Made by a program: the position numbers and the translations under genes. The notes beneath the pieces were generated by a model. That model was not told the DNA's origin. It made no database searches and saw only the letters and a list, made by a program, of their open reading frames with translations. Shown here one piece after another: positions 1-40,680 of a DNA stretch of 64,000 bases (its first letter is position 1; each line of letters begins with the position of its first letter). Origin of the DNA: Octopus sinensis (Eukaryota); contig NC_043003.1 of NCBI RefSeq assembly GCF_006345805.1, forward strand, positions 100,316,001 to 100,380,000. The letters are read 5' to 3'.

Positions 1-670
1 CTTCAAGCATTCACCACATCTCATCTCCCTGCTCCTTTCACCCAAAAACCACCCCTCCTTGACACACATTACATCCCCTAGTTTTTTGTACTGCCAGTTC
101 CTTCCTTCTCTCCACTTCCAGCTTTCATTCTTATTATCATCCTTTCTCACATGCTATTCCTCCTCTTCTTTTCTTCTGCCATCTTCATCTTGAATCTACT
201 ATCATTCCCAGTGCCCTCTTTTGACCTTCACTATGCCTATTCACTATAGCTACCCCTTACGTACCTCTACATCTCCCTCCCCACTGTTCCTATACCTTGC
301 TCATCGTCTCTCCCCGAACTATCATCCCTGAGCCACTCTTATCTCTTTCTTCTTTCCCCCTCCCATATTGATATTTCCCATCAAACTGCACCTCCATTCC
401 TGTCCATCACTCTCTACCTTCTGCTCTACCTCCATCTGTCGCTATCCCCTCTTGATCCACCACCTGTATCATCTCTTGCTTCTTAAATAACATACAGCAT
501 AGTGCTTGTGCAGATCTCTCTCCCTCTAGCTGTTACAGCTTGGATCTCCTACTGGGCCAGGCTACTAGTCATCCTCAGCCATATTAGTTATGTTTAATAC
601 AACCTTCCCTTCATGCCCTCCATGCTTACAAAACAGGAATAAAAATGCATTGTCGTTTTTGTGAATTCAG

Positions 671-786
671 GAGCCTCGCCGTAGTCCAACACCAGAAAGG
701 AAACGAGGGAGTCACAAAGAAGATAAAAGTTACAGAAGCCCATCCCCACGAGGGAGAAGAAACAGAAGTCGCTCTCCACACAGAAG
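671..786 (+). CDS. PRPF38A: Coding exon of an RS-rich splicing factor (probable PRPF38A), internal exon, phase 0 to 2
   Basis: Acceptor ttttgtgaattcag|, donor AG|gtactg. The 116 nt read EPRRSPTPERKRGSHKEDKSYRSPSPRGRRNRSRSPHR and join in phase with 8523. Resembles the KPRRSPT.. RS region of vertebrate PRPF38A (from memory). The N-terminal PRP38 domain lies outside the window, so the symbol is tentative. Confidence 0.75.
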
Positions 787-1323
787 GTACTGCTTGTCAT
801 TTGTTGACTACAGATTTTTAGATTGGAAAATAAATTTGAATTCCTAACCAGAGGAATTAAGTTCAGTTATGTGGCTTCTTAACCTCAAAGCTAGATTAGG
901 TCTCCTCTGGGTTAACATTATGTCTGTGTGCACAGGCTTAAGCAAGTTTTAAAAGAATTTTTTTTTTTTCTATATTTGAAGATTAGCAGTTGCCTACACT
1001 AGCAAGTCTCCACTCCTCCCAACAGAATTGTCACTGCTTTTGGGTTGCTACAACTACTGTTGTTACAGTAGTTGCTATCAAAACACAAGGGCTACAACAG
1101 ATACCACAACGTATCTTGCCTAGTACTCTAACAGTTCCATCAATTCACTACCCTAGGTCGGTGATTTATTTTTTTATTCCTCAATCTACAAAAGGGCAAA
1201 GTAACCAGTTTAATATCAACAAGGGATGTTAACATCATAAAACTAAGTTTCACTCAAGTACTGACTGCTGTGGAATATCAACTTTCATACACATGCGCAC
1301 ATGTATACATACACACATATACA

Positions 1324-2200
1324 TATCATCGCCATCATCATTATATCATCATTTAACGTCTGTTCTCCATGCTGGCATGGGTTCGATGGTTTGACAGAAG
1401 CTAACCAGCTGAAGGGCTGTTCAGGTTTCATGCCTATTTTGGCATGGTCTCTACAGCTGGATACCCTTCCCAATGCCAGCCACTTTACAAAGTGTACTGG
1501 GTGCTTTTATGCAGCACCAACACAGGTGCTTTTTACATGCCACCAGCACCTATGAGCCCTCAAGATTAGAGATGCTCAACTGGGAAGGTTGCAGGGGACA
1601 AGGCTGTATGCAAGGGCAACCACACTTTTACTTAGCTTGATGTCTTTTCTAGCACAGCAAGCCACCAGGTGTCTTAATCCTCTGTCATCCTTGCTGTGAG
1701 TCCCAACACCTGTAGATCCTTTCTCACCACTTCATCCCACTTCTTCTTGAGTCTGCCTGTTCCACATGTTTCCTCTACAATTAGAGATAATGACCTTTTG
1801 ATGCAATTGTCTTCATTCATATGCATTACATGGCCATACCAGCGCAGTCTTCTCTCTTGCACACTACATCTGATTCTGATTATACCCAGTTTTTCTCTCA
1901 GATCACTTACATTCTGTTGTATATGCACACTGACATTACCCATCCAGCGAAGCATACTAGCTTCATTTCTTTCAAGTCTTCACATTTCCTCAATAATCAC
2001 AGCTCATGTCTCACTGCCATGTAGCATAGCTGTTTGTACACAGGCTTCATACAATCTGCCTTTGATTCTAAGAGAGAGGCCCTTCATTATTAATGAGGTA
2101 GTAGCTCTCTGAATTTCACCCAGTCTATTCTTATTCTAGCAGCTATGCTTTTGGAACAATCACCCCAACTACTAATTTGGTTGCCTAATTAACGGAAACT
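1324..2200 (-). mobile_element. RTE-clade LINE, 3' fragment with 3' UTR and (ATG)n tail
   Basis: ORF 1674-1955 (MLRWMGNVS..RRLRWYGHVMHM..GTGRLKKKWDEVVRKDL) is an RTE ORF2 C-terminus. The tail matches that of the copy at 42118-43498. Confidence 0.8.
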
Positions 2201-2589
2201 ATCTACTACTTCTAGAGATCCCCCCTCCTCGGTATATGAGGAAGTCTTTTTTTTGTACATTCCTGGTGTTTAATGTTATTGTTAATTTTATTATTATGCA
2301 AATAAAATGAATTACAAAAAATATAGGTATATTATATACTAAAGGAAATTATAGAAAATATATTGAAAGAAAGGGAGGTGTCAGGAGATTTGGAGAAAAT
2401 GTGGGTCATGTAATTATTAGAGGGAAGAGTCAAACAAATATATATCACAATATAGTGTAAGATAATATGATGTGCAGAGGATGTGATGAGTAATCGAATT
2501 CCATAGAAAGAGTTAATGTATAGAGATATTTTTTAAAAGATCAAGATATTAGAAATAGGAATGTTAGTAAAAAATTCAAGGGGTTGGGT

Positions 2590-3290
2590 AAGAATTATTT
2601 GAGCTTAATAGAAAGGTATTTGCTCATGTGTTTACATGAAAAAAACTTTTCATCCCTAGTATTAACCAGATGTCCATTCATTCTCATATTGTAGCTTTCT
2701 CCCAAACATAACCTACAAATTTTGTTATTATATCTATAAGAGGGAGCAGAAGATAGGGATTTTCTAAGATATTGAGTAATCAATATTGTTTCTTTTGAGT
2801 TGCCAAATTTTTTTAGATAGACCTGTATTATTCTCTTTTCTAGGGTCATTAAATGAAGATCTGTGATTATTGATTTGTGATTTTATAGAATTTTTTGTGC
2901 AACCAATGTATATAAATTTAGGAGTTATGAGTAATAATGATTGCTTGGTATACTACTTCTTTCATTTTGCAATTTCTATCTACTTCACAATTTAAATTAT
3001 TGAGTGGTACTATGTTGTTATGTCTATATTTATTAGAGATAATGGAGTTTTGGTTGTTATTATAATAGTAGTTGTTAGTCATAGAATTATTGGAGTTGCT
3101 AGGTATATTTGGTGAAGTTTTTTTGTTATAGAGTACGTCCAGTTTCTTATTGTTAAAAGAGATTATCCTAAAATGGTTTGAAGAGACTGAAAATCCAAAT
3201 CTGATTTTTTTATTATTAAATATTTTAGCATATTTGGAGTTTTAAAAGTTTTTATTAATTATTAATTTTTTAAAATTTATTTTATTTGCA
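2590..3290 (-). mobile_element. Penelope-like element fragment (GIY-YIG endonuclease end)
   Basis: Degenerate VVYQA..YIG followed by ICRLCLGE...LVNTRDE...SCKHMSKY, typical of a PLE endonuclease C-terminus. Confidence 0.65.
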
Positions 3291-3489
3291 TAATATGTCC
3301 TTAACAAAAAACCTCTTCCACTTACCTATGTTAATACTGTTTTATGCTACTTGCCAATCTACCTGATATTTAATTACATTTTATGCCTGATATATGCAAA
3401 CACATATAATACCTCTTGGTGTCCAACTTGCCTACAACCATGTGTGCATTTCTGTATATTAGTCCTATTTGTCATTGTGTGTGTATATC

Positions 3490-3526
<37 letters not shown>

Positions 3527-3529
<3 letters not shown>

Positions 3530-4697
3530 TAGTTTTATTTTTATAGCGTGCTTTCACTTCACTACCGAGCGCAGCTCTGTGTGCCTTGGGTATGTGCTGT
3601 GATTTGTTGTGATGCTCTGATGGTTATTGTATGGAAAGTGTTCTGCATAGGATGTGTGCAGTGTCTAGTAGTGCAATTTTCTGTATGTTATATGTGTTTG
3701 TAAGTTTTGGTATGTATTTGTCTAAATATTTTTTTATCATGCCTAATGCATCTACTATGACAGGAATTGCTTCTGTTTTTAGATTCCACATTCTGGTTAC
3801 CTCTATTTCCAGGTCTTTGTATTTTGAAAGTTTCTCCATTTCTTTTAGAGACACGTTGTCATCTGCTGGTATTGATACATCAATTAGAAAGCATTTTTTT
3901 CTTCATGATCCCTGACAACTATATCTGCTCTGTTGGCCTTAATTTCTCTATCTGTGTGTATCGGCATATCCCAGAGTATGGTTGCTTTCTCGTTTTCTGT
4001 GACCTTTTCTGGTGTGTGCCTATACCATCTTTTTTCTGTTGTTATTCTGTAATGTTGGCATAGCTTCCAGTGTATGTAGGTCCCAACTCTGTTGTGTCTG
4101 TGAATATATTCCTTCTTAGCCAGGACTGGGCAGCCAGAGATAATATGATTTATTGTTTCTTGTCCATCTCCACATATTCTGCAGTTACTTGTTATATTTC
4201 TTTTCATTACGTGTTTTTGGTAATTTCTGGTGGGGAGGCTTTGGTCTTGTGCTGCAATTAAAAATCCCTCTGTCTCTGCTTTGAGTCCTGAGCTTCTCAA
4301 CTATTGCTGGGATTTTTCTTTGTCTATTTCTTTTGCGTTTAGTTTAGTCCAGTATTTGCCATGAAGGGGCTTTTCTTGCCATCATTTTATCATGGTTCGT
4401 TGCTGTTCTAGTTTTAGTTTAGATTTCATTTGTTTTATAGCTTTTGTTGTTTCTTCATCTTCTTCTTCATATTTGTTAGGTGGCATGATTTCTTGTTTGT
4501 ATTTGTCAGCTTCCTTAAATACTGAGAACAGTTTTTTGTTTTGCTCGTGTTTTGCCACTATTTGTATCAGTTTTCCTTCCTTCTGAAGTAGATATTTTTG
4601 CAGTCCTATGGTGGTTATTTTATTGTAGTTTTCCAGCTGTATAAGGCCTCTACCACCTTCTATACGTTGTATATATAGCCTTTCTATGTCAGATTTT
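3527..4697 (-). mobile_element. R4/Dong-type non-LTR retrotransposon (restriction-like endonuclease), 5'-truncated, ending at (TAA)n
   Basis: GLKAETEGFLIAAQDQSL..CRICGDGQETINHIISGC (CCHC) ..NRADIVV.. (RLE) ..KEMEKLSKYKDL..ALLDTAHIL. The 3' end abuts (ATT)n at 3489-3525. Confidence 0.85.
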
Positions 4698-5167
4698 TCT
4701 TCTTCTTCTTATGTGCTTATATTATGTGCTAAATGTTACCACTAATATGTATTTTTAATACATATACATGTTCCACACATACACACACACACACACATAT
4801 ATATTTACCACTATATATACATACATATAAATATATATATGTGTGTGTGGGGTTTTTTCTCTCTCTCTTTGCACCAGTATGAGTATATTTATTTATTTAT
4901 TTATTTTTTGTACGCTGTTCCTTCTTTCATGTACACCCTCAAATAAAACAACTTGAATACCTATATCTGTGTAAAAAATCAACTAGAATACCTATACCTA
5001 TGTATACTAATTTGCAGATATGTTCTCTTCTAATGTATTAGTATATACTAACAAATTTTTTTCCCTTATATTTTTTTTATATGATATTATATATGAATTA
5101 TTTTGTATACTTATGTGCACCCACTACTCATAAAAAAATTTTTTTGGTATATTCTTAATGCCTATAG

Positions 5168-5420
5168 GCATATGGCATGGTGGTTAAGAGTGTGGGCTAC
5201 TAACCCCAAGATTCCGAGTTCGATTCCAGGCAGTGACCTGAATAATAATAGTAATAATAACAACAACATCGAAAAATACCTTAAGAATGAGAACCCAGGT
5301 TCGAAATTTCCCCAAGACACCTGGTGAAGGCTGGAGGGTATATCAGCCAAAACATGTTAACAACAAACAAAATGAGGACAAATATCCGTCAAATGTAAAT
5401 AATGTAAATAATGTGCATAA
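5168..5420 (+). mobile_element. tRNA-derived SINE
   Basis: A-box-like TGGCATGGTGG and B-box GAGTTCGATTCC, followed by a non-tRNA body. Confidence 0.7.
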
Positions 5421-5839
5421 TTCCTTATCTCTTAAATATAGAACTGAATCTCCTATTACTTCAATATTTATTAATTACATAATATTACTATATACTTCCC
5501 TCTCACTTTATGCCAAACTAGCTTCTTAACTCATACTTTTATTTATACCTAAACATGGTCAATCGATACTTATAATTAAAATTTTTTTTACTACTCTTTA
5601 TTCCTAGCTCCATCATCTCCCCTACATTGTTATTTTCAGTTTGCCTCTAATTAAACCTCTGAACATTCTTTTTAGATATTTATAGCCACAGCAAGTATTT
5701 ATGATCTAAATCTGTACTATTAACAACTAATTTCCTATTTTTTTATTTTTACCTTATAATTAATACATACAAACAAATATTAGTTCTTACACAAACACAA
5801 CTCCATTTTATGTAGCTCTTTAAGCATTTCCACCCCTTA

Positions 5840-6700
5840 ATATTGTTTTCATTGCATTCTAGCAGCCATCCACATACTTAATTCTCAAGTTTAATTTCAT
5901 TATCATGTACAGTTTTTTTAAATACACACCACACCTAGTAATGTTTATAACTGTCAGGTCATATCCTAATTCAAACATAACTATGCTTTTCCATTGGACA
6001 TTTCTATAAAACTTCTTTACATACCTAGCCCTCACACTAAATTCCTTACTGAAGTCGTTGTTGACTCCCACTTTATTTACTGTGTCTTTGTACCTGGTTT
6101 GTTTGGCTCTCACAAACTCTTCCTCAATGCTTAGTTTCCCTAGTGACCACAATATCATTATTTGTGATACCCTTTCAAATGCCTTAACTTGATTAACTAT
6201 TTAGGTGGTAATCCTTTACTGGATATTTTGAGCATCTCTGCAATTATCTCTGATGGGCCTGCTGCTTTCTCTCTGTCTCTCTTCCTGTCCTCGATTGCCT
6301 TAGTTACTTCACTGCTATCAATTTGAATTGCTGGTCTCTCTTTAAGGTCAGCATAAGGTAGTGCCTCATTATCCCAGGCATTCTCCATGCTCTTAACAGC
6401 CTCTCATATTAGCAATTCTATATCACTTTCTTGTCTTCCATAATGATGACATGTATGCCTTCATCATTTCAAATATATTTCTCGCCATTGACATCTTGGT
6501 TCTCTCTCATGTGATTTTGAACACTTCACACCTCTGATCCTCACATTGCAAGACATGCACCAGCCTGTTCCTCTCTGCTTCACTCTTAGTCAACCATACC
6601 GGTCATCCAGTTGTCCTTCTAGTTATTTGGTAATGCTGCCTACCACCTCTTTCCTTCCTTCTTTCCTTCCAAGATCCACTCCCAAATTTTATGAAACTCT
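5840..6700 (-). mobile_element. Degenerate RTE LINE ORF2 fragment
   Basis: ..KAAGPSEIIAEMLK.. and ..LWSLGKLSIEEEFVRA..VGVNNDFSKEFSV.. are RT-region remnants with many stops. Confidence 0.6.
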
Positions 6701-6741
6701 GTATTAGTTGATATTGTTGGAGTTATCTCTTTTATTCATTA

Positions 6742-7369
6742 CTAGCAGCATAGCCCGGCGTTGCCCAGGTATGTAAGAGCCCCTAGTAGGCAACGACTAA
6801 TCCCAATGTAGTCCTTTCCCTCCAGGGAACGAAGGTGCATGTAGACGTTGCAATGTCTTGTCTTCACTCGAATACCTCTGTATATACGATGTTCCTAGCT
6901 GTCCCTTTGGGCGAAAACATGAAAACATCATTGCGCCTCCCAACGTGTGAACAGCCCACGTAGAGTTGACCGTGGGCGAAGCACTGTTCGCCCAAATGTA
7001 ACCCAGCGACTTGTAGCGTTTGGCCTTGGGATTTATTGATGGACATTGCGAAGCAGAGTTTAACAGGAAACTGAGAACGCCTGAAGTGGATTGGTAGGTC
7101 AGAGTTAAAAAGGCCGAGTTGCGCCCCCTAGACAGTCTGTGGTTTGTGTTTCTGATTCTTGACCCCATGTCGAATTTATCAATTTTTTTCAGAACTGGGG
7201 GAACTTTTCAAAATTTTCGCTGCGTTAGTTATGAATTATGACATTGGGCTATGTGTGTATCAAGTTTCATCAGAATCGGTTGAAAGCCGTGGTCAGGGTG
7301 AGGGTACAACCAAACAGACACACAGAAACACACACAGACAAACTGCCGTTTATATATAGAGAGAAGAGA
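6742..7369 (-). mobile_element. Non-autonomous Helitron carrying a PIF1-like helicase C-terminal remnant
   Basis: 5' TC, 3' GC-rich hairpin plus CTAG, between A and T. ORF 6864-7046 MSINKSQGQTL..CFAHGQLYVGCSHV is the helicase C-terminal motif. Confidence 0.85.
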
Positions 7370-8522
7370 TTTTTAGCTTTTAAGACCTTTTGGAGAGAGT
7401 TTAGTTTGCAAAGGGGATTTCAGTTAATGGAAGTTTTTCAACTCACCATATTACATATGTGATACTCTATTGTGCATGTCATACTTACATGAACGGGATT
7501 TTTTTTTCTGAGAGAACAATTTATAGTCAGTATTAGGATGTCTTTTGTACACTACTAACTATTATAGCCATGAATATCTGAAAAAATTATGTTACTACTC
7601 ATGTTGCTGGTTTTGTTTTTATATATAAACAATTGATCATATCAAATAGAGCTGCTAAAGTGAACTGAGTATTTAATATCCATAGAACTTGTAAAAGTTG
7701 TAAAGAAATTTATTTTGCTCAGTAGTCATTGATTAAAAAAAACTTGTAATTTTTGTGTTTCTAGAGCAGACATTGAAATAAGTAATCAGTTAAATAGAAA
7801 AACACGATATAAATAGTGTCATTTAATTTTGTTTGGTGGGTATGTTATTACATTAGATGGGTTAGAATGTGGTCATGGTGTATAATAAACTGTCAGTATG
7901 TTCTGTTTCGTATTGTCTTGCACATCAAAACTTAGATAATTAATTTTCAATCCTGGAGCCTTAATTTATTGTAGTAGTATTAAAAGTAAGGTAGTTATGT
8001 GTGCACTTCTATTTGTGGCCAAAACTTATAGGAAATCATAAAGTTATCATAGTAAGTTAACAAAACACTGATCAGTTTTAAAGTGTTACTGGTAATGTTT
8101 ACAACTGTAAACCATACCACTCCATTTCAACTACTTACCTACTGCAGCTAGGTGATTGAAGTGGTTCTGAGTTAAATAAGTATCTTGGTCATGCTTACAG
8201 TACAGTTCTAGTGACAGAGTATTAACCACAAACTCCATGACTGATGTCTAGAAGCATATAATCTATGACTCTCATTAATATACTTCTACACTATTTCACA
8301 GTAGGGAGCCATTGCACTCTGTAATATATACTCATAATAAAGTAGACAGTACTACTGGGAGTTAAACGCATGTATAGGCCCTCACCTGATACATTTGTTA
8401 CCATATGCCAGGATATAATTTGTTGACTCTTGTTTTTACAGTACCTTACTGTTTTTGTTATCTGTTGCACTAACCAAACCAGAGTATTTTTGTAACAATT
8501 CATTAATTTGTTACTTTTACAG

Positions 8523-8593
8523 AGATAGAAAAAGCCCTGTTAGCAGAAGAAGAAGTAGTTCTAGAAACAGAGATCGCCGCCATCGTTCACCTG
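8523..8593 (+). CDS. PRPF38A: Coding exon of probable PRPF38A, phase 2 to 1
   Basis: Acceptor gttacttttacag|, donor CTG|gtaagt. Reads (R)DRKSPVSRRRSSSRNRDRRHRSP and is in phase with both neighbouring exons. Confidence 0.85.
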
Positions 8594-9109
8594 GTAAGTA
8601 CCTTTTAATGTTTAAACATTTCTTATTAAAGTATGATTATATTTCATTGTTTGCATTTAGAGTTCTAATTAGGTGGAACAGTAGTTTTAAGTAAATAAGT
8701 GCCTTAACCATCAGTCTGAGAAATACTTGTCATTGCTTACACTTTCTTCTTGCACACTTTCATTCAGTATTCTCTCGCTTACTGTCTGGTATCCTCACCT
8801 CTCTCATATGCTATACTTAGTCCTTTTCATGTCAGATGTTATAACACCGTCATGTTAGCCAACCAAATCCATTCGATTGTTTAAAAGCTATGTTTCAGCT
8901 TCTGCTTTTTTCTTCATTTCTTTCTTATCTTTTCTTCTGGAAATGTGTCTTGCTCATCATAGAAGTAACTTCGGAGTTTTACTGGCCATTTTAGAATAGA
9001 CAATGGATTGGCTAAAATCTGAAGCAATAAGCTGTTATGTTATCTACTTTATGAATTCACTTTCAAATTTAAAGATGTTGACTGAAAAATGTTTGCTTCT
9101 GTTTTTCAG

Positions 9110-9134
9110 TTACGAGGCACAGAGATGATGACAG
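9110..9134 (+). CDS. PRPF38A: 25-nt coding micro-exon of probable PRPF38A, phase 1 to 2
   Basis: Acceptor ttctgtttttcag|, donor AG|gtaact. Reads (V)TRHRDDD(R). It is exactly what is needed to keep the RD/HIND frame between 8593 and 10764. Confidence 0.75.
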
Positions 9135-9929
9135 GTAACTAAAACATTAAACTTTATGTTGATTGTTTATTTTTATCTTATGCTTATTTGATGACAATTA
9201 CTTTATCATGTTTGTTAAGCAAAATATTTTTTTACTGTGTGTTTGCTAAGACATGTTTGTTTGTGTTAATACTGTTGAAACAAATATGAGATGGGGTGGG
9301 AGCAAGATTTTAAGTTTGGATAACATTTTCATGAGTGGTAGTGGCATAATAAATACAAGCATTTATTCCATTGATTGTAGAAAGGCCTTCAAACAGTAAG
9401 ATCATTAGCCACAGGTGAGAAAATACTATATTCCACACTAATGTAGTATCTCCATCAGCATTTGGAAAATGGACATACCACTCAAGGGGCCATGAAGTGC
9501 AGATGTGTACATGCATTACTTATTTTATGTACTATATTCAGGATAAGTAGTCCATTACCTTCATAATATTCATTTTGCCATGCAGAAATGAAGCACAAAT
9601 TATATATCTTCTCATATCTGAAGCTCAACATTCTGATTACTTCTTCCTATATCAACCTTGCTCTTCTTTTGATCTGGGAGTCCTTCACTTGACAAGGACA
9701 CCTTTCACTGCCAGCATATTTTACCCAACATGTGTCACCCATACATCATGTGCAGCCAAAACAGTATAGCTGCTTCCTCTTCAACATACATCAAGTTACA
9801 CCTTTTAATGTCCAGCCATTCTTCTCATCTTATTTATGCTGTCTTTGGGCATTCAGTAGATTATACTCTATTCACTTCGCATTGCCAAAGTTTTATTATT
9901 ATTAGTGTTACTACTACTTCTACTGAGGC

Positions 9930-10125
9930 AGCAGGCTGACAGAATCATTAGTATGCTTAGTGGAATTTTTATCCCTCTTTAAGCTCTGAGTTCAAATTTT
10001 ACTTGGATCAACTTTCCCTTTCATCATTTTGGGATCTATAAAATAAGTACCAGTCTAGCAATGGGGCTGATAAAATTGACTAAACCCCTTTCAGGCCTTG
10101 TGCCTATAGAAGAAAGGATTATTAT
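9930..10125 (+). mobile_element. SINE (core gagttcaaat...ctttcatc...aagtaccag)
   Basis: Shares the core with copies at 11170, 21500 and 27435. Confidence 0.55.
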
Positions 10126-10763
10126 TATTACAACACTTTTCACAAAGTCTTTCTTCACAAAGCATCACCTTTCACTTAGGTTTACTGGGTGGTACAACAC
10201 AATATTATTCATTGTATCTGGAGAATAGAAAAAAAAAGTAAAATCAAATTGTGTAATTTCTATATTTGAAAAGGTTAATCAGAAATGTAAATAGTTAAAA
10301 ACAACAAACTAACAATATATATATATCAATACAAATGTTGAGTGAAAATTAATTTTACATTTACATGTAAATAGAATGGAGCTTTGTAGCATACCAAATT
10401 AACAAAAGCCAAAAGACAGGTTACTGGCTTGATTCACTGTAAACTTATTACCTGCTACTAAAGCTTACATACACTCACTCACATTTGCATTTCTCTCCTG
10501 CCTTCACTCTCCCTCTTTCTTACACTCCATCTTTCTTCTATCTCCCCCATTGGCACTTTCTTCTCTTTCCCTCATTTCTCCTTTTTCTCTCATATTCCTT
10601 TCTTCCCTCTCATAACTTCCACTCCTTTTCTTATAATATCTCTCTTTCTCTTTCTATCTACTCGTTCCTCTTTCTCCAACAAAAGCACATATACAGATAT
10701 GCTATATCTAACTTTCTATTTCATATTTTTGCTACTTTTATAAATATTTTCATAAAATTTCAG

Positions 10764-10965
10764 AAAGAAACGCAGTAAGAAAGCCAAACGGGATCACAGA
10801 GAACGCAACCGAGATACTGACAGGCACCGGGATAGAGGCCGTGAGCGTGACCGTGACCGTGATGACAAGAGAGACAGAGACAGAGGTCATAGAGGGGGCC
10901 GAGATGAGATTCGAGAGGCCAATGAACTCAGAGCCAGGCTTGGGATGGCCCCTCTTAGGCCTTAG
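10764..10965 (+). CDS. PRPF38A: Terminal coding exon of probable PRPF38A: RD repeat plus C-terminal HIND-like motif
   Basis: Acceptor aaaatttcag|. Reads (R)KKRSKKAKRDHRERNRDTDRHRDRGRERDRDRDDKRDRDRGHRGGRDEIREANELRARLGMAPLRP-TAG. The four exons total 414 nt (137 aa plus stop). Confidence 0.85.
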
Positions 10966-11043
10966 TGTGAATGCATTCAAGTTTTAGTGTTTGTAAAAAC
11001 ATTAAAACCAAAGTAAACCACTCCGGTTCATCATCTCTTTGTA

Positions 11044-11049
11044 AATAAA
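11044..11049 (+). promoter_or_regulatory. Candidate polyadenylation signal of the + strand gene
   Basis: AATAAA about 80 nt after the stop codon, followed by T-rich sequence. AATAAA is common in AT-rich DNA. Confidence 0.35.
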
Positions 11050-11169
11050 TTCATCTTTGTTATAAACTCATCATTTTTATTAATTCCTCTTTGTTATTAA
11101 TTCATCAACTTTCTATTTTCTCTTTGTCTTAGTTATTAGTACTAGTGACCAAAGGACAGTGGATTGATA

Positions 11170-11660
11170 TAGTTGTTAAAGCATCAGACAAAATACCTTG
11201 TTTCGTCTCTTCATGTTCTGAGTTCAAATTCCACTGAGGTCGACTTACTTTTCATCCTTCTGGTATCAATAAAATAAAGTACCAGTGAAGTATTGGGATC
11301 AAATATTATCAACTCCCTCACCCTCACCCCCATTTGCATATTTTAGAAATAGTTGTTATAAGTTAATTTTGACTTTCATCTTGTTGGGAGTCAAAATAAA
11401 TATTAGTCAACTGTCCCCCATCCCAAATTTTAAGCCTCATGTCTATGGTAAGAAAATATTATTAAGGCAGTATTCTGGCAGAATTGTTAGCATCTTGGAC
11501 AAAATGCTTCGTAGCATTTCTCCTGAGCTTAAACACTGCCAAAGTCAACTTGCCTTTCATGCTTTAAAGATCGATGAAATGAATGAATACCAGTCAAGTA
11601 CTGAGGCTGGTGATATTGATTAATCCTGACCCCTCAAAATTGTTGGCTAAGTGCCAGTTG
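11170..11660 (+). mobile_element. Two adjacent SINE copies
   Basis: gttctgagttcaaattccactgaggtcgact..ataaaataaagtaccagtga at 11215-11290 and a decayed copy at 11480-11660. Confidence 0.6.
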
Positions 11661-11999
11661 TTGTTTTGTTATCAATAACACGTCACTTCAAGTTGCTTGT
11701 AAATTTTGTCTGCTTTAACTATTTCAAAAGACTATGTTTACAACTGTTTACTCTGTGCTTCTTGTAAAGTGACCAAGCTTCTGAGGAGTTCCTCACTTTC
11801 ATTGTACTTTCACCTTTTGGGATAGAATTGTAGAAATATGTAAAAGTGTGAAATTTACGTATTTCTTTTTTAAAAATTTCTAAGCGTCACATTGAAATAT
11901 TCGACAGAAAACCAGAGGAATTTAAACATGGTTTGGAACAGCAATGTTAACACTGCCTTCTACACATTAAACCAAAGTACTGCCTCCACCAGTGCCAAC

Positions 12000-12225
12000 A
12001 GAAATAATCCTTTCTACTATAGGCTCAAAGCCTGAAATTTTGCGGTAGGGGTTGTCACTTACATTAACTCCAGTGTTCAACTGGTACTTATTTCATTGAT
12101 TCCGAAAGGATGAAAGGCAAAGTTGACCTCAACAGAATTTGAACTCAGAACATAAAGATGAACAAAATGCCATTGAAAATTTTTGTCTGGCATGTTAATG
12201 ATTTTGCAAATTCACTGCCTTAGTG
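12000..12225 (-). mobile_element. SINE, reverse orientation
   Basis: Reverse complement of the same core (aactggtacttatttcat..gatgaaaggcaaagttgacctc..gaatttgaactcagaac). Confidence 0.65.
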
Positions 12226-12312
12226 CCAACAGAAATAATAACAATGAAGACGAGAGGTACAAAAACAAAATTAACACACCTGCTAATGATGCTAATGCAA
12301 AAACAATAACTA

Positions 12313-13582
12313 TGAGGGGCGTTCAATAAGTAATGCCCCTGACCCACTTGCAGTTGTTTGATCTAGCTGAAATTTTGCATGTGCACTTATTTATACCTCT
12401 ATAGATTAAGTGGCGAATTACAGCTCTGAACTAATTGTGGTTTCTGATTTACAGGTGTTTGAACTGAGTCAAGTGTGAAATAGAGCCTGTTGAGTGTCGA
12501 GCAGTGATCTGGTTTTTGTATTTGAAAGGACGCACACCACGGGAGACTTTTGATGAAATGAAAGTAACTTATGGTGATGATGCCCCATCATATGACCTTG
12601 TAAAACGCTGGCATTGTGAATCCGAACATAGTCGGAACTCTGTGGAAACTGCTCCCAGATCTGGTCGCCCCCTTCTGCCATTGATGAGACGTCTGTCCGT
12701 CAAATTGAGGCTGCCATTTTGGAAGGTCAACGCATAACTATTCGCCAAATAGCCCATAAGGTCAAGATTAGTACCGGGTCTGTGGAAACTATCATTCATG
12801 ACCATTTGCATATGCAAAAGGTGTCTGCCAGATGGATTTCCAGGTTGCTCACACCTTTCCAGAAGCAAGAACACGTTGAGTGCTCGAGGATGAATTTGGA
12901 GATGTGCCAAGAAGATGAGTCAAAATTTTTCAAAAGACTGATCACACAGGATAAAACCTGGGTCCATCACTATGATCCATAGACCAAAGCCCAGTCAATG
13001 CAGTGAAAGCACCGTGACTCACCTCCTCCAAAGAAGGCAAGGGTGCAGCCCTCTGCTGACAAGGTTATGCTCACAGTCTTCTGGGACCAGGACGGAGTAG
13101 TGATAACAGATTTCCTGGCAAAGGGTACCACAATTACAGGAGCCTATTATGCTTCACTTTTGAGGAAATTAAGAGAAGCTATCAAAATCAAGAGGCGGGG
13201 CAAGATCAGCAAAGGCATCCTCCTCCTGCAGGACAACGCTCCGGTCCACAACTCGCGTGTCGCCAGATCAGAAGCACAGGCGTGCAACTATGAACTCCTC
13301 CCCTTGCACCCTCTGATTTTCACCTCTTCCCAGCCATGAAGTTGATTTTGAAAGGAAAGTATTTCCCAGATGATGCAGCCTTGATTTCTGAAGTCACGTC
13401 GTGGTTGGAGGACCAAGCTGGGGTCTTCTACAAAAACGGTCTTCAGAGCTGCATCAAACGATGGGAGAAATGCGTAACTCTGGGTGGTTCCTATGTAGAA
13501 AAAGACTAATAACTTTGCCAAGTGTCGTTGCTCTACGGCTATGGGAAGTGGGTCAGGGGCATTACTTATTGAACGTCCCTCG
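12313..13582 (+). mobile_element. Mariner (DD34D) transposon, full length about 1.27 kb, pseudogenised
   Basis: 37-bp TIRs (12313-12349 and 13546-13582, 2 mismatches) flanked by TA. Transposase motifs WISRLL, ITQDKTWVHHYDP, QDNAPVH, LAPSDFHLF, with stops and frameshifts. Confidence 0.95.
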
Positions 13583-13599
13583 TACCATCATTACCACCA

Positions 13600-14580
13600 C
13601 CACCAGCATTAACAGTAAAGAAATAAATAATGAAAACAGCATGCCAAAAATATCCATTGGTTGCAATTTTATTGATATCTGCACACAGGAAGAAATTTTT
13701 TGTGTGTGATGACACAGACCATCTTAAGGTTTTCTGTCCACAGCAAAAGAGGGAAGAAGGGAAACCTCCACTACTCCTGATACCATCACCACATCAGCAA
13801 CAGCAACTGTAATGGTAAAATTAGCAGCCATGAAAGCAGCAACAAAAACATCAACAGTTGAAGCAACAACAAAAGAAACACTATTCTCAAGGGCCACCCA
13901 TTACTACCAGAAACAGCAACCGAAATCCACCCAATAACTAGAGAACAAAAAGGCAAGCACCTCCAGAACATTTTCCTCCCAACTTGGAACTATTCAAACA
14001 TGTCATATAGCAAAGGTGACAAGAAAGCAACCAAATTGAAGGAGGCAATCAACAAGCAAAAAGAAAAAGAGACCAAAAAAAGTGGGAAGTTTGAACAGAC
14101 AGAAGAAACATCTTCAACAATACCATCATCATCATCACCATTACTACCACAGTCATCATCAACATTGTAAACACTAGCACAACCTAAAATCCACACTTAA
14201 AGGAACTACTCACATAGTTGTAAGAGGTCCTGTGGCAAGCCCAGCACCTGATAGCTGGACATGATTAAGGAGGACACCCCAGAGGCTTGATGTCACCTTG
14301 GAGGATGCAGAGGAGCTGGCACAAGACTGCCAGCAATGGAGAGCACTGGTGGACCTGGTCGGCTCTACACAATAACTTCTTTAGGACCGGTAACCTGGGA
14401 TAACCCCAGCCCCATCAAGCAGTAGCAAAGAGGGAGAAAGAGAGAGAGAGAGAGAGAACCAACAAGAACAGCACCTGCAAAGAAACATCATACATGACCA
14501 TAAATACAAACAACACAGAACTCATAAACCACATACAAAAACACACTAACATTACTCTCCATGATATCAACACCAATTTT
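13600..14580 (+). mobile_element. Highly decayed Tx1/L1 ORF1 relic interrupted by an RTE 3' fragment (about 14220-14430)
   Basis: RKKFFVCDDTDHLKVFCP resembles the zinc knuckle at 16908. NTELINHIQKHTNIT resembles NEKLVSYIIDNTSTNIT at about 17510. Confidence 0.45.
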
Positions 14581-15855: not shown

Positions 15856-17630
15856 ATGGCTATGAAGCGAGCAGTCGGCTGTTCCCTTCTCCCAACACCA
15901 CACCCTCCGCAAACACACACATTGTCAAAAACATTTCCAAACCGCCTACTTCGTGCCATAAAAGGCAACAAAGATCCTCCTTTCGAAGCTCTAAGCATGT
16001 GCAGCATTCAAAAGGAGAAAGAAAACCAGGACGTCACTTTCGACGTCATTGAAGATTTTCCTCCTCTTCCTTCCACCAATGCTCCGGTACCGGAGAAGGA
16101 GGGAAGAAAGAGCGTTCCAAAGAAAAGCGACAACGATGGCGTCACCTTTGACGTCATCGAAGATTTTCCTTCTCTTCCCTCCACCAGTGCTCCAGTACCG
16201 GAGAAGGAGGGAAGGAAAATGACCAGCAACCGCACCGACACCACCACCAGCAACAACACAGCAAGCCATCGTAGCAATTTCGCCTCCGCTGCAAAACAAA
16301 GCTCGGAGGAGGTGAATGTTACGATGGAGGAAATCAAAAGCGCAAAGGAGTTGTTGAGAAAAGAGGGGAACAGTGTTTTCCTCAATACACCTCAACAACT
16401 CATACATGACACTAACAAGAAGACAATATTTTACAAGGTTTTCGACAAGAAAAACAAAAGACTAATTAACACAACACCCCAACAATTGGAAATAGCTCTG
16501 AAGCCCATATGGGGCAAAAAGAGCTATGTCACCAGAGGGAAGCGTTTCGGAACCATGGAGGTTCGCTTCCCAATGGAGGAGGATGCAAGGGCGCATGCCA
16601 TTTCGCCCTTGCAAAATGAAAATTTGTTCCTAGTTCCAACGTACCTCGGCGGAGGGTCACGAAAATAAAAATCGACATAGTACCCGCCGAACTAAATATA
16701 TCATGGCTGGTGGCGGCTGTCCTCTATGGCATAGAGGACACTGCCACTATTCTGGACGTACGAAGAGTGAAGGAAAAAAACTGGTCAGGTATGGGAGTTC
16801 AAATGCTGGTACAAATCCAGCAGGAAAACATTAATGCCATACCTGACTCGGTAAATTTGCCGGACGGCACCAGGCTGCATGTTGCTGTGGAGGGGCGAAA
16901 GCCAAAATGTTACCACTGCAGCAGCAAAAGCCACCTAAAGAGGGACTGCCCTATTTACAAGAAAAGAATGGAGGCAGACGGCAAGAGGCAGCAGCAGCAG
17001 GAACAACAACAACAGCAAGAAACACCAAAGGCTGCCACATCACCAACACCATCACCACCACCACGACGAACGACACCACCTCCAACAACCATTAAACCAA
17101 CACCAACCCCAGCACCAAGAAAGACAACAACAAAAAAGGAAGAAGTATCACCGTCACCATCACCAACAGATACAGCAACACCACCGCTACCAGCAGAACC
17201 AACAATTTTTCACCCTGCTGCTGAAGCAGACCCGACAGCTATCCCCTTTCCGGATCAGGACAGCTCGGATTGTGCGAGCACTGATACCGAGAAAGGTGAA
17301 TGGCACACAGTGCTTCCGAAGAAGAAGAGGAGGAAGAAGCAAAAAGACACACAGGGGAAGCACGAACAAATAGTGCTTCCCAACATCAACAACAACAACA
17401 ACAACACACACTCACAACAACAAACAACAACACTTTCGACACCACTACTGCCACTGCCACACACTCCAACACACACAGACACGATTACAGCCATAAACAG
17501 AAAAAATGAAAAACTCGTTTCATATATAATAGACAACACAAGCACAAACATTACAGATTTCATTATACCTACACACAACACACCACCAGCACACATTCTC
17601 ACCATTAAAATTAACCAAAAAACACAGTGA
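15856..17630 (+). pseudogene. Tx1 ORF1 (gag-like, zinc knuckle), one frameshift near 16652
   Basis: Reading across 16652 gives PTYLGG-RVTKIKIDIVPAELNISWLVAAVLYG. CYHCSSKSHLKRDC (CX2CX4HX4C) at 16908-16949. Confidence 0.88.
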
Positions 17631-17797
17631 CATAAAACAGATATTCCCTAACTATGTCGGATCGCTAGGGAGAAGTTTCTCAAAGAAACTTTATAAAAAT
17701 ATTGTGGAAACACCCGTGCAAAAGCACAAGCCACCCCCACTACCAACAACAGTAAGTAGAGCCTTTTTCTCCTTTTATTTTTTGTCACCTTTGAAAC

Positions 17798-20700
17798 ATG
17801 GCAAAACTTAGAATCGGTTGCTTGAATGTGAAAGGCCTCGGGTCACCTGTTAAACGACCTGAGGTTTCATGATGTGGATGTAGCAGCCATTAGTGAAACC
17901 AGGCTCTCCGACCCGCAGGAACTCGCAGCCCTTTTCGGCGGATACAAGATATTTCTATCTCCGTGTCGGCCGGGAGCGAGCGGTGGTGGTACTGCGGTGT
18001 TGTTTCAGAAGGGCCTGGACTTGAAAATAAGGACAGTCTTCCTAGATCCAGAAGGTAAGTTGGTGGTCCTTGACGTAGACGGTAGTGACGGCGGTGCTTT
18101 CAGACTGCTGGCTGCCTACGCTCCAACAGGAGCAGGACAGTCGGATTATTTCAAACGTCTGGAAGTTTTCCTGGGAACGTCACGCACTCTAGTGCTAGTT
18201 GGGGATTGGAACGCTGTCTTAGGCGAACGTTTCGACTGGGTGGGCAGGGGAGCATCTGATAGGAGAGGGGGTGCAAGAGCCTCGCCAACCTACTCGGACG
18301 CTTTCAGCTGTCCGACAGGTTTCGACTAGACAAGCCGAATGTGCCAATATGGACTTGGACCAATCGCATCGGGTCGTCTAGATCGTACTTAGAGTGTTTT
18401 GTAGGCCAGCGGATAAGGACAGCATAGGGTGTTCACAATTCCACCTAGTCGACTACACGGACCACAAATTCGTGATCTACGGTCGACTTAGATCGGCTAC
18501 ATAGACAGGGACCTGGTTACTGGAAGCTGAACGCATCGTTAACGGCGTGCAAAGCTTACAGAAACCGGATTAGTTTACTAGTTAAGTGGGCGCTCACGGG
18601 GGCAACCATCAACAACAACTGGTGGTTTGCACTCAAGAGAGCAATTAGAGTAGAGTCGATTAGGTTTAGTAAGTCACTAGTGATTGAACGTAGGAAGAGA
18701 GAGCGGGATTTAGTTAAGAAATTAGACGAGGCTCTTGAGACTGGCATCGCGACCGACGTGTTGGCGGCAAGGTTGGCCCTCGACCAACACTTTGACACCA
18801 AACATGAAGGCTGCGTTGTCAGAGCTAAGGCACGTTCGCTAAGCGGGGAGGGGACTAGAGCCGCTCGATGGGCCCGCGTGGTGGAGGTGAAGCAAGGCAA
18901 CAAAGCAACCATTCGGTCTTTGGTGGACCAGAACGGGCACGAGGTTACCGAACCGAAGCAGATGTGTGCGGTGTTTCAGCGGCACTTTGCTCAACTGTTT
19001 AGGACGATCGGTGGAACGGACAACGGTACAGACTTTGGTGTGTACCTGGACGGCCTACCGCAACTCTCGGACAGCGAGGCAGAGTGCAGCGAAGGACCGA
19101 TATCTGCCTGGGAAGTGGAGGAAGCAATGAAGAGTTGCACAAGAGGTAGATCGCCGGGTTTGGATGGTCTGCCCTACGAGCTTTACACTTCAATGCCAGA
19201 CTTGTTTGCGGGCCTGTTGGCAGACGCCTACTGCAAAACGGGAGAATTCCTGCTTTTGTCTGTCGAGGGGCGGTGGCTTTGCTGAGAAAGGACCCAAACA
19301 AGGGGGACGTTATAGGGAATTTTCGGCCCATCACTCTGCTCAATGCAGAGTTGAAGATTTTGGCCAAGGTGCTAGCCAAGAGATTGGCGCTTGTCGTGGA
19401 CATACTGGTTGGCAAGACCAGGTCGATACACGACAACCTCCATCTCATGCACTACATCATAGAGAGGGTGGGTAACGATGCTGGCGCGGGTGAGGCTTTG
19501 ATCAATTTAGATCAGAGTAAAGCCTTCGATAGGGTCGACCATTGGTACCTGACAGCTGTTCTCAAGGCAGCCGGCTTCGGTCCAGTCTTCCGCGGGTGGA
19601 TTGCTACTTTATACAGCAACATCTGCTCGGTGATACGGGTGAACGGTCACCTTTCGGAACCGTTTGACATCTCACGTTCGGTCCGCCAAGGATGCCCTTT
19701 CTCCTCCCTCTTGTACATATTGACTCTCGAGCCATTACTGCGCAAGTTCGAGACTTTGAGGAGTATCCCGCGCGATCTAGGAGGTGGAAACAGCATGTCT
19801 GCCTATGCCGACGACGTCACCGTGATGGTGTCGAGCCACAGGCACATTGACCTGATTGGCGAGACGCTAAACGAGTACGAAGCGGTGACAGGGGCAAAGG
19901 TTAACGCGGAAAAGTCCGTGGGCTTGCAACTGGGCACCTGGAGAGGCAAACCCATGCCGTCCAACAGCGTCGTAGGGCACTGGACAGACGGACCCGTTAA
20001 ACTGCTCGGGGTCTGGTTCGGTCCGGACCTCCAGGTGGATAGAAACTGGGAAGAAGTGACGAGCAGGGTGGCCAATCTCACCCAGAAATGGGCCGAGAGG
20101 AAGCTGTCCCTGAAAGGTCGAGTGGAGGTGGCAAATGCGTATATCGCAACTGTCATCTATTACCGCTTGACCGTCGTCCCTTGTCCCGACCGCTGGTTGT
20201 CCAAGCTGGTACGCCTGCTCTTCGACTTTTTGTGGAAGGGTCAGGTGCCACTGGTCAGGCGATCCATCTGCTGTCAACGACCGCTGAACAGAGGCCTTGG
20301 CATGCTGTGGTTACTGATAGTTTCCAGAGGTCGCTCGCCTGGCAGTGCTACCGAGGGGCTCTGCCTGTTCGGGATAAACTCTACCAGCACGGAAGTGCCG
20401 TCAGCCTGGCCTGCCCGAGGTGTTGCCAGGACGACGAAACCGTTCTGCATGCACTTGTCCAGTGCCTGAGTATTGCTGAACTATGGGTTTATGTCGAACA
20501 GCTACTGTCATGTATAGGACGGATCCGGCTATCAGCTGAATCCATAGTGAAGATTGCCCCGCCGACCTCCTTTAACAAGGAGGGCAAGGCAGTTTTCCTG
20601 TGCCTAGTGGCTGTGGCAAAAGAGGTTGTATGGTGGACCCATTTGAAAGGGCTAAAGTCAGACACTTTCCTCTTTGGTCAAGGCCTCATCAACTTTTTCA

Positions 20701-20828
20701 AGTTTCACTTGAAATGGAAGATGAGGTTAGAGAGGAGAGTGCTGTCCGATAGCAAGTTTTCTGAAAGGTGGGTGAATTGTGCAAGAATGGCCAGTATAAA
20801 TGGACCAATTCTCAGGTTTCGCCTGTAA
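17798..20828 (+). pseudogene. Tx1 ORF2 (APE endonuclease, reverse transcriptase, C-terminal CCHC), several indels
   Basis: MAKLRIGCLNVKGL, AAISET, GDWNA, SPGLDGLPYE, FRPITLLN, SVRQGCP, YADD at 19804-19815, CPRC..ETVLHALVQC. Confidence 0.92.
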
Positions 20829-38110: not shown

Positions 38111-38928
38111 AAGAAGTCTACAATCTGCTGCCCATTCAAGTTGAAATTTCTCCACTTTGACGAGGATGTGGTGAATCATTTAATGATGTGGGGGAAGGGA
38201 ATTCCTGAGGGGTGGGGGGGAGTTGATTTTCCCATGTTTAAAATATCCATGAATGTCCATTTCAAATCAAGTTAGGTTAGAATCTTAGAAAAAATCTCTA
38301 AAGAATACTCGCACAAATGAAATCCAAAAAAATTTTCAGTCCAAAACAAACGCGAACTTTCAAATTATTAATTTTTGAAAAATAGATGTGAATGTTCTCA
38401 AGGATTTGAATCTCAGTTGAAAAAGCGTTTTTTATAATTCCATATTTCACTGTTAGATGTTGCAATATTTCGATTTATCCAATTGAAATATTGCAACAGC
38501 TGACAGTGAAATATAGAATTAAAAATATAGAATCTGCAATTCAAACTGTAAAGTCAAAGTACCAAAGATACAAAATATGAAGAATTTCCTACCTTTCTCT
38601 GAAATCATAAATGAAAAGGAAAAATAGTACCTTGCAAAATAAAATATCTTGATCACAAATTAGTTCAAACGAATGAACTGAGATGCTTAGTGACAGTGAG
38701 CAAACAATATCTGTATCCCTTTATATATACATAGATAGATACACATACATGCACACACATACACATACATGCATACACACACACAGAGACTTGTCTGTGT
38801 GTGTACGTGTGTGTGTGTGTGTGTGTGCACGCACGCATGCCTTGTTTTGGATACAGAAAGAATTTTATCTCCAGTTTTTATTGCCTTTGGCGGTCAAAGG
38901 CCACTGCTCTTGGTACAAAACTTAACGT

Positions 38929-38976
<48 letters not shown>

Positions 38977-39006
38977 ATATACATATATATATATTTAAAT
39001 ATTTGT

Positions 39007-39454: not shown

Positions 39455-39457
<3 letters not shown>
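39007..39457. mobile_element. Fold-back/MITE-like element with 129-bp inverted arms
   Basis: 39046-39174 versus 39329-39457, 5 mismatches. A second, deleted copy lies at 63218-63433. Confidence 0.8.

Positions 39458-40680
<1,223 letters not shown>

What the first reader, a model, noticed from the sequence alone, without database searches (positions are those of the whole stretch)
10903..10962. HIND (Hub1/UBL5-binding)-like motif at the C-terminus of an animal PRP38A-like protein
Seen: the spliced gene ends DEIREANELRARLGMAPLRP*. Established: HIND has the pattern E..N.LR..LG..PL (Snu66/SART1 N-terminus, e.g. IEETNKLRAKLGLKPL), and its Arg contacts Hub1. In yeasts and vertebrates it sits on Snu66/SART1, whereas plants and amoebozoans carry it on the PRP38 C-terminus; human PRPF38A lacks it. 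Inference: this mollusc-like genome has the plant-type arrangement, a second or alternative way to recruit UBL5 to the tri-snRNP/B complex. The PRP38A identity rests on the RS tail only.
Basis: partly seen in the sequence, partly recalled or inferred. Interest (0 to 1): 0.75.

Follow-up and report, generated by a model that had tools for sequence, protein, structure and literature searches.

The report
Octopus PRP38A ends in HIND motif
The last 20 codons of the octopus splicing-factor gene PRP38A encode a real, strongly conserved docking motif (HIND) for the small protein UBL5, but nearly all non-vertebrate animals sampled have the same motif and it was already shown in a nematode, so the finding is correct but ordinary.

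Summary
Window 10903-10962 (+) encodes DEIREANELRARLGMAPLRP followed by a stop. It closes a four-exon, 137-aa reading frame that matches residues 201-337 of the annotated Octopus sinensis/vulgaris PRP38A exactly. The window matches the O. sinensis chromosome at 100% identity, and the PRP38-domain exons lie upstream of the window start.

The motif is a HIND. A profile of 58 invertebrate PRP38A C-termini hits only three sequences in the whole PDB: yeast Snu66 HIND I and II, the 3PLV HIND peptide, and human SART1 117-135. It is the only invariant block in an otherwise fast-drifting tail.

- The motif closes PRP38A in every non-vertebrate animal group sampled: molluscs, a brachiopod, annelids, a nemertean, chelicerates, a myriapod, a nematode, echinoderms, hemichordates, amphioxus, a tunicate and a coral. 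It is missing from all vertebrates sampled.
- Published work already shows that the C. elegans PRP-38 HIND binds UBL-5.
- All 23 mollusc SART1 proteins retrieved keep their own HIND. The arrangement is therefore dual, not plant-type.
- Octopus SART1 itself could not be fetched.

Verdict: a new member of a known kind, of low interest.

The parts
671..786 (+). PRP38A coding exon (aa 201-239 of the 337-aa protein; start of the RS/RD-rich tail). First exon of the gene inside the window.
   Evidence: Borders are AG|GAGCCT...CAGAAG|gt. tblastn of P0277 aa 199-239 hits L001 43404-43526, which is window 665-787.
8523..8593 (+). PRP38A coding exon (aa 239-262, RS-rich).
   Evidence: Splice sites. tblastn is 100% identical over aa 239-262.
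9110..9134 (+). 25-nt micro-exon (VTRHRDDD plus split codons). It is needed to keep the terminal exon in the HIND frame.
   Evidence: tblastn of aa 263-271 is 100% identical. The same residues are present in the annotated proteins of three Octopus species and of Argonauta.
10764..10965 (+). Terminal coding exon (aa 271-337 plus TAG): an RD/K-rich stretch followed by the HIND.
   Evidence: tblastn is 100% identical over aa 271-337.
10903..10962 (+). HIND-type motif D318-P337. Core is I320...L335 (10909-10956). The key Arg is R327 (10930-10932). Invariant residues are N324, R327, A328, L330, G331, P334 and L335.
   Evidence: Pfam HIND scores 16.3-18.8 bits, E 0.001-0.006. phmmer hits yeast Snu66 HIND I and II. 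The reciprocal profile hits only bona fide HINDs in the PDB.
10897..10941 (+). Predicted alpha-helix, aa 316-330, the helical part of the motif.
   Evidence: In the AlphaFold2 model the C-terminal blocks have the highest pLDDT of the protein (89 and 81), while the tail from about 196 to 315 has no predicted secondary structure and mostly pLDDT below 50. The model as a whole is poor (mean pLDDT 50).
11044..11049 (+). AATAAA 79 nt after the stop codon, a possible poly(A) signal (weak evidence).
   Evidence: The hexamer occurs 142 times in this AT-rich window, so its presence here carries little weight.

Best explanation
The window holds the last four exons of Octopus sinensis PRP38A, a B-complex-specific spliceosome protein. 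After about 120 residues of disordered, fast-evolving RS/RD-rich tail, the protein ends in a short amphipathic helix plus an LG..PL turn. [quoted passage not shown]

It most likely binds the ubiquitin-like protein UBL5/Hub1 non-covalently. R327 would form a salt bridge to UBL5 Asp22. I320, A323, L326, L330, M332 and L335 would pack on the UBL5 surface, as in the solved SART1 and Snu66 complexes. This would tether UBL5 to the tri-snRNP/B complex through PRP38A, in parallel with the HIND on SART1.

Shown here: gene identity, exon structure, motif homology, conservation and distribution. Inferred: UBL5 binding by the octopus peptide. More speculative: because PRP38 is bridged to MFAP1 in the human B complex, and MFAP1 R358 engages the same UBL5 Asp22 there (PMC10943123), a PRP38-borne HIND could deliver UBL5 next to MFAP1 for hand-over. 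The dual HIND state is ancestral for animals, and vertebrates are the lineage that lost the PRP38A copy.
For: Identity:
- The window is 100% identical to O. sinensis CM016865.1.
- The 137-aa model equals the end of XP_029638774.1.
- That protein has Pfam PRP38 at 231.9 bits.
- All 11 tail-only homologues carry PF03371.

Motif homology:
- Profile A1 of the PRP38A C-termini finds just three sequences among 177,635 PDB sequences: Snu66 (E 5e-9, both HINDs), the 3PLV HIND peptide (1.6e-6) and human SART1 117-135 (1.2e-5).
- Against 1.84 billion representatives it finds 260 hits at E<=1e-3. Among the best 149, most of the long proteins are SART1/Snu66 with N-terminal motifs or PRP38 with C-terminal motifs.
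- Seven of the eight SART1 residues that contact Hub1 in PDB 4PYU (L118, I120, T123, L126, R127, L130, L132, L135; PMC4141198) are identical or conservatively replaced. This includes the essential Arg.

Selection: the motif is the only invariant block in the tail across 41 species.

Structure: a confident helix is predicted at 316-330 at the end of a disordered tail.

Precedent:
- GST-PRP-38(HIND) of C. elegans pulls down UBL-5 (PMC7615767).
- The Arabidopsis PRP38 C-terminus binds AtUBL5, and Plasmodium PRP38 binds Hub1 (PMC6857937; PMC4141198).
- HIND transplanted to other tri-snRNP proteins restores Hub1 function in yeast (PMC8431670).
Against: - No binding data exist for any mollusc.
- The octopus motif is below Pfam's curated HIND cut-off (16.3-18.8 bits against 25).
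- The position equivalent to SART1 L118 is Asp in octopods.
- In C. elegans the PRP-38 HIND failed in yeast two-hybrid, bound only in a crude-lysate pull-down, and PRP-38 was not recovered in UBL-5 co-IP. PRP38-type HINDs may therefore be weak binders.
- No complex model could be made with the tools available.
- The hand-over to MFAP1 is pure inference from human structures.
Confidence: 0.78

Rival explanations
1. The C-terminal helix is conserved but serves another partner or purpose, for example another B-complex protein, nuclear import or speckle targeting. On this view it no longer binds UBL5 usefully in animals that also have a SART1 HIND, and is a HIND-derived element with a changed or vestigial role.
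For: C. elegans PRP-38 HIND was negative in yeast two-hybrid, and PRP-38 was absent from UBL-5 co-IP. Most PRP38A-type motifs score below Pfam's HIND cut-off, with a consistent signature (E-A-N instead of E-T-N, A/P instead of K before P-L) that differs from the SART1 type. Vertebrates dispense with it altogether.
Against: A vestigial element would not stay invariant at N, R, A, L, G, P and L from coral to amphioxus inside a tail that otherwise drifts freely. The conserved positions are exactly the Hub1-contacting ones. Plant, Plasmodium and nematode PRP38 HINDs do bind Hub1/UBL5 in at least one assay each.
Confidence: 0.15
2. The motif is an artefact: a chance resemblance in a low-complexity tail, or a wrong frame or exon model, so that the real protein does not end this way.
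For: A direct splice from 8593 to 10764 would read the last exon in another frame. Low-complexity R/D/E/K-rich sequence can produce spurious short matches.
Against: The in-frame micro-exon with canonical splice sites restores the frame. Independent annotations of O. sinensis, O. vulgaris, O. bimaculoides, Argonauta and Acanthosepion end in the same motif. So do orthologues from about ten other phyla. The core pattern is expected 0.01 times in the six-frame translation of the window.
Confidence: 0.02
3. Strict plant-type arrangement in octopus: cephalopod SART1 has lost its HIND, so PRP38A is the only UBL5 anchor.
For: Octopus SART1 could not be retrieved, so this is not directly excluded. No cephalopod appeared among the 120 listed SART1 hits.
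Against: All 23 mollusc SART1 proteins examined (gastropods, bivalves, a chiton) keep a canonical HIND. So do SART1 proteins from a nemertean, a hemichordate, arachnids, insects and fish.
Confidence: 0.05

Closest known systems
C. elegans PRP-38 C-terminal HIND (Kadam et al. 2022, FEBS Lett, PMC7615767)
   Same: An animal PRP38A orthologue with a HIND at the very C-terminus, in a species whose SART-1 also has a HIND (dual arrangement). The nematode sequence retrieved here (Panagrolaimus) ends ...EIQEANALRASLGLKPLEP, the same type as octopus.
   Different: The worm motif has been tested: GST pull-down was positive and yeast two-hybrid negative. The octopus motif is untested. The sequences differ at a few non-contact positions.
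Plant (Arabidopsis) and Plasmodium PRP38 C-terminal HIND (Mishra et al. 2011 as cited in PMC4141198; PMC6857937)
   Same: Same host protein and same C-terminal position. It binds Hub1/UBL5 through Asp22.
   Different: In plants Snu66/SART1 has no HIND, so PRP38 is the sole anchor. Molluscs keep the SART1 HIND, so only Plasmodium shares the dual state.
Human SART1 HIND (aa 117-135, PDB 4PYU) and yeast Snu66 HIND I/II (PDB 3PLV, 5NRL)
   Same: Same motif: a helix plus an LG..PL turn, the essential Arg (R127 in human, R327 in octopus) and the hydrophobic contact pattern. These are the only PDB sequences found by the PRP38A C-terminal profile.
   Different: The host protein differs (tri-snRNP protein SART1/Snu66), and the position is N-terminal rather than C-terminal. 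The SART1 type reads S-L-S-I-E-E-T-N-K, whereas the PRP38A type reads (E-L)-E-I-x-E-A-N-E. Pfam's model favours the SART1 type.
Vertebrate PRPF38A
   Same: An orthologous protein with the same PRP38 domain (about 75-78% identity to the cephalopod protein) and an RS-rich tail.
   Different: It ends ...SKKSHKKSRRGNE with no HIND, in mammals, birds, reptiles, amphibians and fish. Lamprey and hagfish also lack it (they end ...KRSHKGE). No Pfam HIND hit was found in Xenopus.

Membership tests
PRP38 family (PRPF38A orthologue) | N-terminal PRP38 domain (Pfam PF03371) | tested here: met
   P0277 scores 231.9 bits against a cut-off of 22.4. The domain exons lie upstream of the window, at L001 3001-30908. 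The window itself holds only the tail.
PRP38 family (PRPF38A orthologue) | The window's exons belong to that gene | tested here: met
   The 137-aa model equals P0277 residues 201-337. The window is 100% identical to the O. sinensis locus that encodes P0277.
HIND (Hub1-interaction domain, Pfam PF19252) | Sequence match to the curated HIND profile | tested here: inconclusive
   The hit is specific but sub-threshold: 16.3-18.8 bits, E 0.001-0.006, against a cut-off of 25. All 9 invertebrate PRP38A proteins tested hit HIND (13.9-36.6 bits). The orthologous oyster motif passes at 36.6 bits, and Xenopus has no hit.
HIND (Hub1-interaction domain, Pfam PF19252) | Reciprocal recognition of structurally proven HINDs | tested here: met
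   Profile A1 of the PRP38A C-termini hits only Snu66 HIND I and II, the 3PLV peptide and SART1 117-135 in the whole PDB.
HIND (Hub1-interaction domain, Pfam PF19252) | Conserved Arg that forms a salt bridge to Hub1 Asp22, plus the hydrophobic contact residues | tested here: met
   R327 aligns with SART1 R127 and is invariant in 41 species. I320, A323, L326, L330, M332 and L335 align with I120, T123, L126, L130, L132 and L135. Only the L118 equivalent is not hydrophobic (D318).
HIND (Hub1-interaction domain, Pfam PF19252) | Alpha-helical element | tested here: met
   AlphaFold2 predicts a helix at 316-330, and the C-terminal blocks have pLDDT 81-89. This is a prediction only, and the overall model is poor.
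HIND (Hub1-interaction domain, Pfam PF19252) | Resides on a tri-snRNP/B-complex protein (Snu66/SART1 or Prp38) | tested here: met
   The host is PRP38A.
HIND (Hub1-interaction domain, Pfam PF19252) | Physical, Asp22-dependent binding of Hub1/UBL5 | not testable with these tools
   This needs pull-down, ITC or a complex model. Chimeric or multimer inputs are not accepted by the structure tool.
'Plant-type' arrangement (HIND on PRP38 only) | SART1/Snu66 of the same lineage lacks a HIND | tested here: not met
   All 23 mollusc SART1 proteins carry a canonical HIND (PF19252 precomputed, motif listed). Octopus SART1 itself was not retrieved.

The most novel reading that the evidence does not exclude
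On this reading, a HIND on both SART1 and PRP38A is the ancestral metazoan (probably ancestral eukaryotic) state. The PRP38A copy was lost once, on the vertebrate stem after the split from tunicates, because amphioxus and the tunicate Styela have it while hagfish and lamprey do not. Vertebrate spliceosomes, the ones solved by cryo-EM, would then be the derived, single-anchor case for UBL5 recruitment. I found no paper that states this distribution, but Mishra et al. 2011 and its supplement could not be read here.
Probability: 0.7. Interest if true: 0.3.

Novelty: new member of a known kind. Interest (0 to 1): 0.15.

Why it matters
The finding matters little on its own. It confirms that octopus PRP38A follows the common invertebrate design, which has already been demonstrated biochemically in C. 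elegans, plants and Plasmodium.

Two by-products are modestly useful.
- Pfam's HIND model under-calls PRP38-type HINDs. Only 1 of 9 tested passes the cut-off, so automated annotation hides how widespread the PRP38A HIND is.
- The clean phylogenetic pattern (present from coral to tunicate, absent in all vertebrates sampled) is a reminder that human B-complex structures lack one of the two UBL5 tethers that most animals have. That is relevant to anyone studying UBL5/Hub1-dependent splice-site choice in invertebrate models.

Tried and rejected
1. Joining exon 8523-8593 directly to the terminal exon is out of frame. This was resolved by the 25-nt micro-exon 9110-9134.
2. The core pattern was used instead.
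The pad took no part in the scoring.
5. The Rfam scan of the window found nothing.
6. AATAAA after the stop codon is not statistically meaningful in this AT-rich DNA.
7. The AlphaFold2 model of the whole protein is poor (mean pLDDT 50, 41-sequence alignment). Only the local C-terminal helix is used, and no fold search was attempted.
9. Insect PRP38 was not among the listed hits, so insects remain unsampled.

Full report
**What is in the sequence.**
On the + strand, 10903-10962 reads DEIREANELRARLGMAPLRP, followed by TAG at 10963-10965. It lies in a terminal exon that starts at 10764 behind a pyrimidine-rich tract and a tttcag acceptor. The exon encodes KKRSKKAKRDHRERNRDTDRHRDRGRERDRDRDDKRDRDRGHRGGR before the motif.

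Upstream there are RS-rich exons at 671-786 and 8523-8593. Joining 8593 directly to 10764 gives the wrong frame. A 25-nt micro-exon at 9110-9134, with borders tttttcag|TTACG...GACAG|gtaac, restores it.

**Which gene it is.**
The homology tool only considers candidates of similar length. All 11 hits carry Pfam PRP38. They are annotated PRP38A from Argonauta (85% identity in the tail), other molluscs and Lingula.

The Argonauta cluster contains P0277. This is XP_029638774.1, 'pre-mRNA-splicing factor 38A [Octopus sinensis]', identical to O. vulgaris CAI9726213.1. Its last 137 residues are identical to my model.

The encoding locus was fetched from O. sinensis GCA_006345805.1, chromosome CM016865.1. 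It is 100% identical to window 1-13965. The gene spans about 50.7 kb, and exons for aa 1-166, the PRP38 domain, lie upstream of the window start. P0277 scores 231.9 bits on Pfam PRP38.

**Is the motif a HIND?**
- The Pfam HIND model (PF19252) hits residues 324-335 specifically but below the curated cut-off: 16.3-18.8 bits, E 0.001-0.006, against a cut-off of 25.
- phmmer of the peptide against the PDB finds only yeast Snu66, aligning to both of its HINDs.
- I built profile A1 from the window peptide plus 57 distinct invertebrate PRP38A C-termini. Among 177,635 distinct PDB sequences it hits exactly three. These are Snu66 (both HINDs, E 5e-9), the 21-residue HIND peptide crystallised with Hub1 (3PLV, 1.6e-6) and human SART1 117-135 (1.2e-5).
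- Against 1.84 billion cluster representatives the profile gives 260 hits at E<=1e-3. Among the best 149, most long proteins are SART1/Snu66 homologues with N-terminal motifs (32, often two in tandem) or PRP38 homologues with the motif at the C-terminus. The rest are short gene fragments and a few multi-HIND proteins from microbial eukaryotes.
- The published contact list for the human Hub1-HIND crystal (4PYU; PMC4141198) is L118, I120, T123, L126, R127, L130, L132 and L135. These map to D318, I320, A323, L326, R327, L330, M332 and L335, so seven of eight are kept, including the essential Arg.
- AlphaFold2 on a 41-sequence alignment gives a poor global model (mean pLDDT 50). It does place a helix at 316-330, and the C-terminal blocks have the highest confidence in the protein (pLDDT 81-89), after about 120 residues with no predicted structure.

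**Is it more than chance?**
In the alignment of 41 invertebrate PRP38A proteins, mean identity to the octopus residue is 0.84 in the domain, 0.42 in the tail (201-317) and 0.74 in 318-335. Apart from P226, the only invariant columns in the tail (residues 201-337) are N324, R327, A328, L330, G331, P334 and L335. The core pattern occurs once in the six-frame translation of the window, against 0.01 expected.

**How widespread is it?**
A search with the Argonauta protein listed 120 PRP38A clusters. I read their C-termini.
- The motif ...EI.EAN.LRAKLG..PL(R/K)(P) closes the protein in cephalopods, gastropods, bivalves, a chiton, Lingula, annelids, a nemertean, a scorpion, horseshoe crabs, a sea spider and a centipede.
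- It also closes the protein in a nematode, crinoids, starfish, a brittle star, three hemichordates, amphioxus, the tunicate Styela and the coral Acropora.
- It is absent from every vertebrate listed. Most complete vertebrate sequences end ...KKSHKKSRRGNE, and hagfish and lamprey end ...KRSHKGE.
- Outside animals, PRP38 with a C-terminal HIND turned up in Perkinsus and in the green alga Chloropicon.
- Insects were not among the listed hits.

**What the literature says.**
- HIND sits on Snu66 in yeasts and vertebrates, on Prp38 in plants, and on both in Plasmodium (PMC4141198; PMC8431670).
- The Arabidopsis PRP38 C-terminus binds AtUBL5 (PMC6857937).
- Kadam et al. 2022 describe a HIND at the C-terminus of C. 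elegans PRP-38 in addition to SART-1. They show GST pull-down of UBL-5, with yeast two-hybrid negative, and they explicitly note the dual occurrence (PMC7615767).

An animal PRP38A HIND is therefore already published.

**Does SART1 keep its HIND?**
The profile search returned a spider SART1 (P0123). Using its conserved core as the query, the last homology search listed 23 mollusc SART1 proteins. Every one has a canonical SLSIEETN(K/R)LRAKLGLKPL(D/E) about 70-200 residues from the N-terminus. At least 11 of those species also appear in the PRP38A list with the C-terminal motif. Examples are Haliotis rubra, Gigantopelta, Liolophura, Pomacea, Babylonia, Aplysia, Littorina, Patella, Lymnaea and Bulinus. 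Molluscs therefore have the dual arrangement, not the plant-type one.

**Mechanism.**
Best supported: the helix at the end of a long flexible tail binds UBL5 non-covalently, through an R327-Asp22 salt bridge plus hydrophobic contacts. This would give the B-complex protein PRP38A its own UBL5 tether in parallel with SART1.

Yeast work showed that HIND works when moved to other tri-snRNP proteins, so the carrier is interchangeable. In the human B complex, PRP38 is bridged to MFAP1. UBL5 Asp22 contacts MFAP1 R358 there, not SART1 (PMC10943123). A PRP38-borne HIND could thus deliver UBL5 next to MFAP1 for hand-over, but this last step is speculation.

Binding by the octopus peptide is inferred, not shown. 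The weak behaviour of the worm motif in some assays is the main caveat.

**Verdict.**
HIND homology is well supported. The 'plant-type arrangement in this genome' reading is not supported: the feature is the normal invertebrate state, is dual with SART1, and is already described in C. elegans. This is a new member of a known kind, of low interest. The only mildly new point is the clean vertebrate-specific absence.

Noticed in passing
window 16620-20825 (+): A non-LTR (LINE-like) retrotransposon remnant downstream of PRP38A. It has an Exo_endo_phos endonuclease ORF at 17832-18326 and an RVT_1 reverse transcriptase ORF at 19150-20466, in overlapping or broken frames.
   Followed up: partly
window 53816-57694 (+): An LTR-retroelement-like stretch. 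The integrase core (rve) lies at 56411-57694. Upstream ORFs at 53816-56307 look gag/pol-like to me, but the two I scanned (53816-54286, 54569-55003) gave no Pfam hit at E<=0.001.
   Followed up: partly
window 3887-4300 (-), inside the PRP38A intron: An ORF fragment with a zf-RVT hit (27.8 bits), a retroelement remnant within the 7.7-kb intron between exons 671-786 and 8523-8593.
   Followed up: no
window 32582-34028 (-), 42027-42407 (+), 38700-41800, 46650-48020: Two adjacent long ORFs on the minus strand without Pfam hits (possibly a DNA-transposase remnant). There is also a PHD-finger-like ORF, long TA/TATG-type microsatellite tracts, and an inverted pair of similar ORF segments at 40692-41168 (+) and 41193-41795 (-).
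   Followed up: no
P0123 / P0286 (spider SART1; not in the window): Spider SART1 proteins carry three to four tandem HIND-like motifs. Parasteatoda has motifs at about residues 197, 254, 283 and 316, and Araneus has three. Other animals examined have one.
   Followed up: partly
P0122, P0130, P0135 (Rhynchopus), P0149 (Euglena longa), P0165 (representative hits): These proteins of 250-530 aa have three or four strong HINDs (88-118 bits on Pfam HIND) and no significant SART-1 or PRP38 domain hit. They could be divergent or partial Snu66, or separate multi-HIND carriers in euglenozoans and other microbial eukaryotes. They are at odds with the statement that clear HINDs occur only on Snu66 and Prp38.
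   Followed up: partly
Pfam PF19252 versus PRP38A C-termini: The curated HIND model detects all nine invertebrate PRP38A motifs tested, but only one (Saccostrea, 36.6 bits) passes the 25-bit cut-off. Automated annotation therefore hides the PRP38A HIND in most animals.
   Followed up: yes
PRP38A orthologues: The C-terminal HIND is present in amphioxus and the tunicate Styela but absent in hagfish, lamprey and all jawed vertebrates listed. This implies a single loss on the vertebrate stem.
   Followed up: partly
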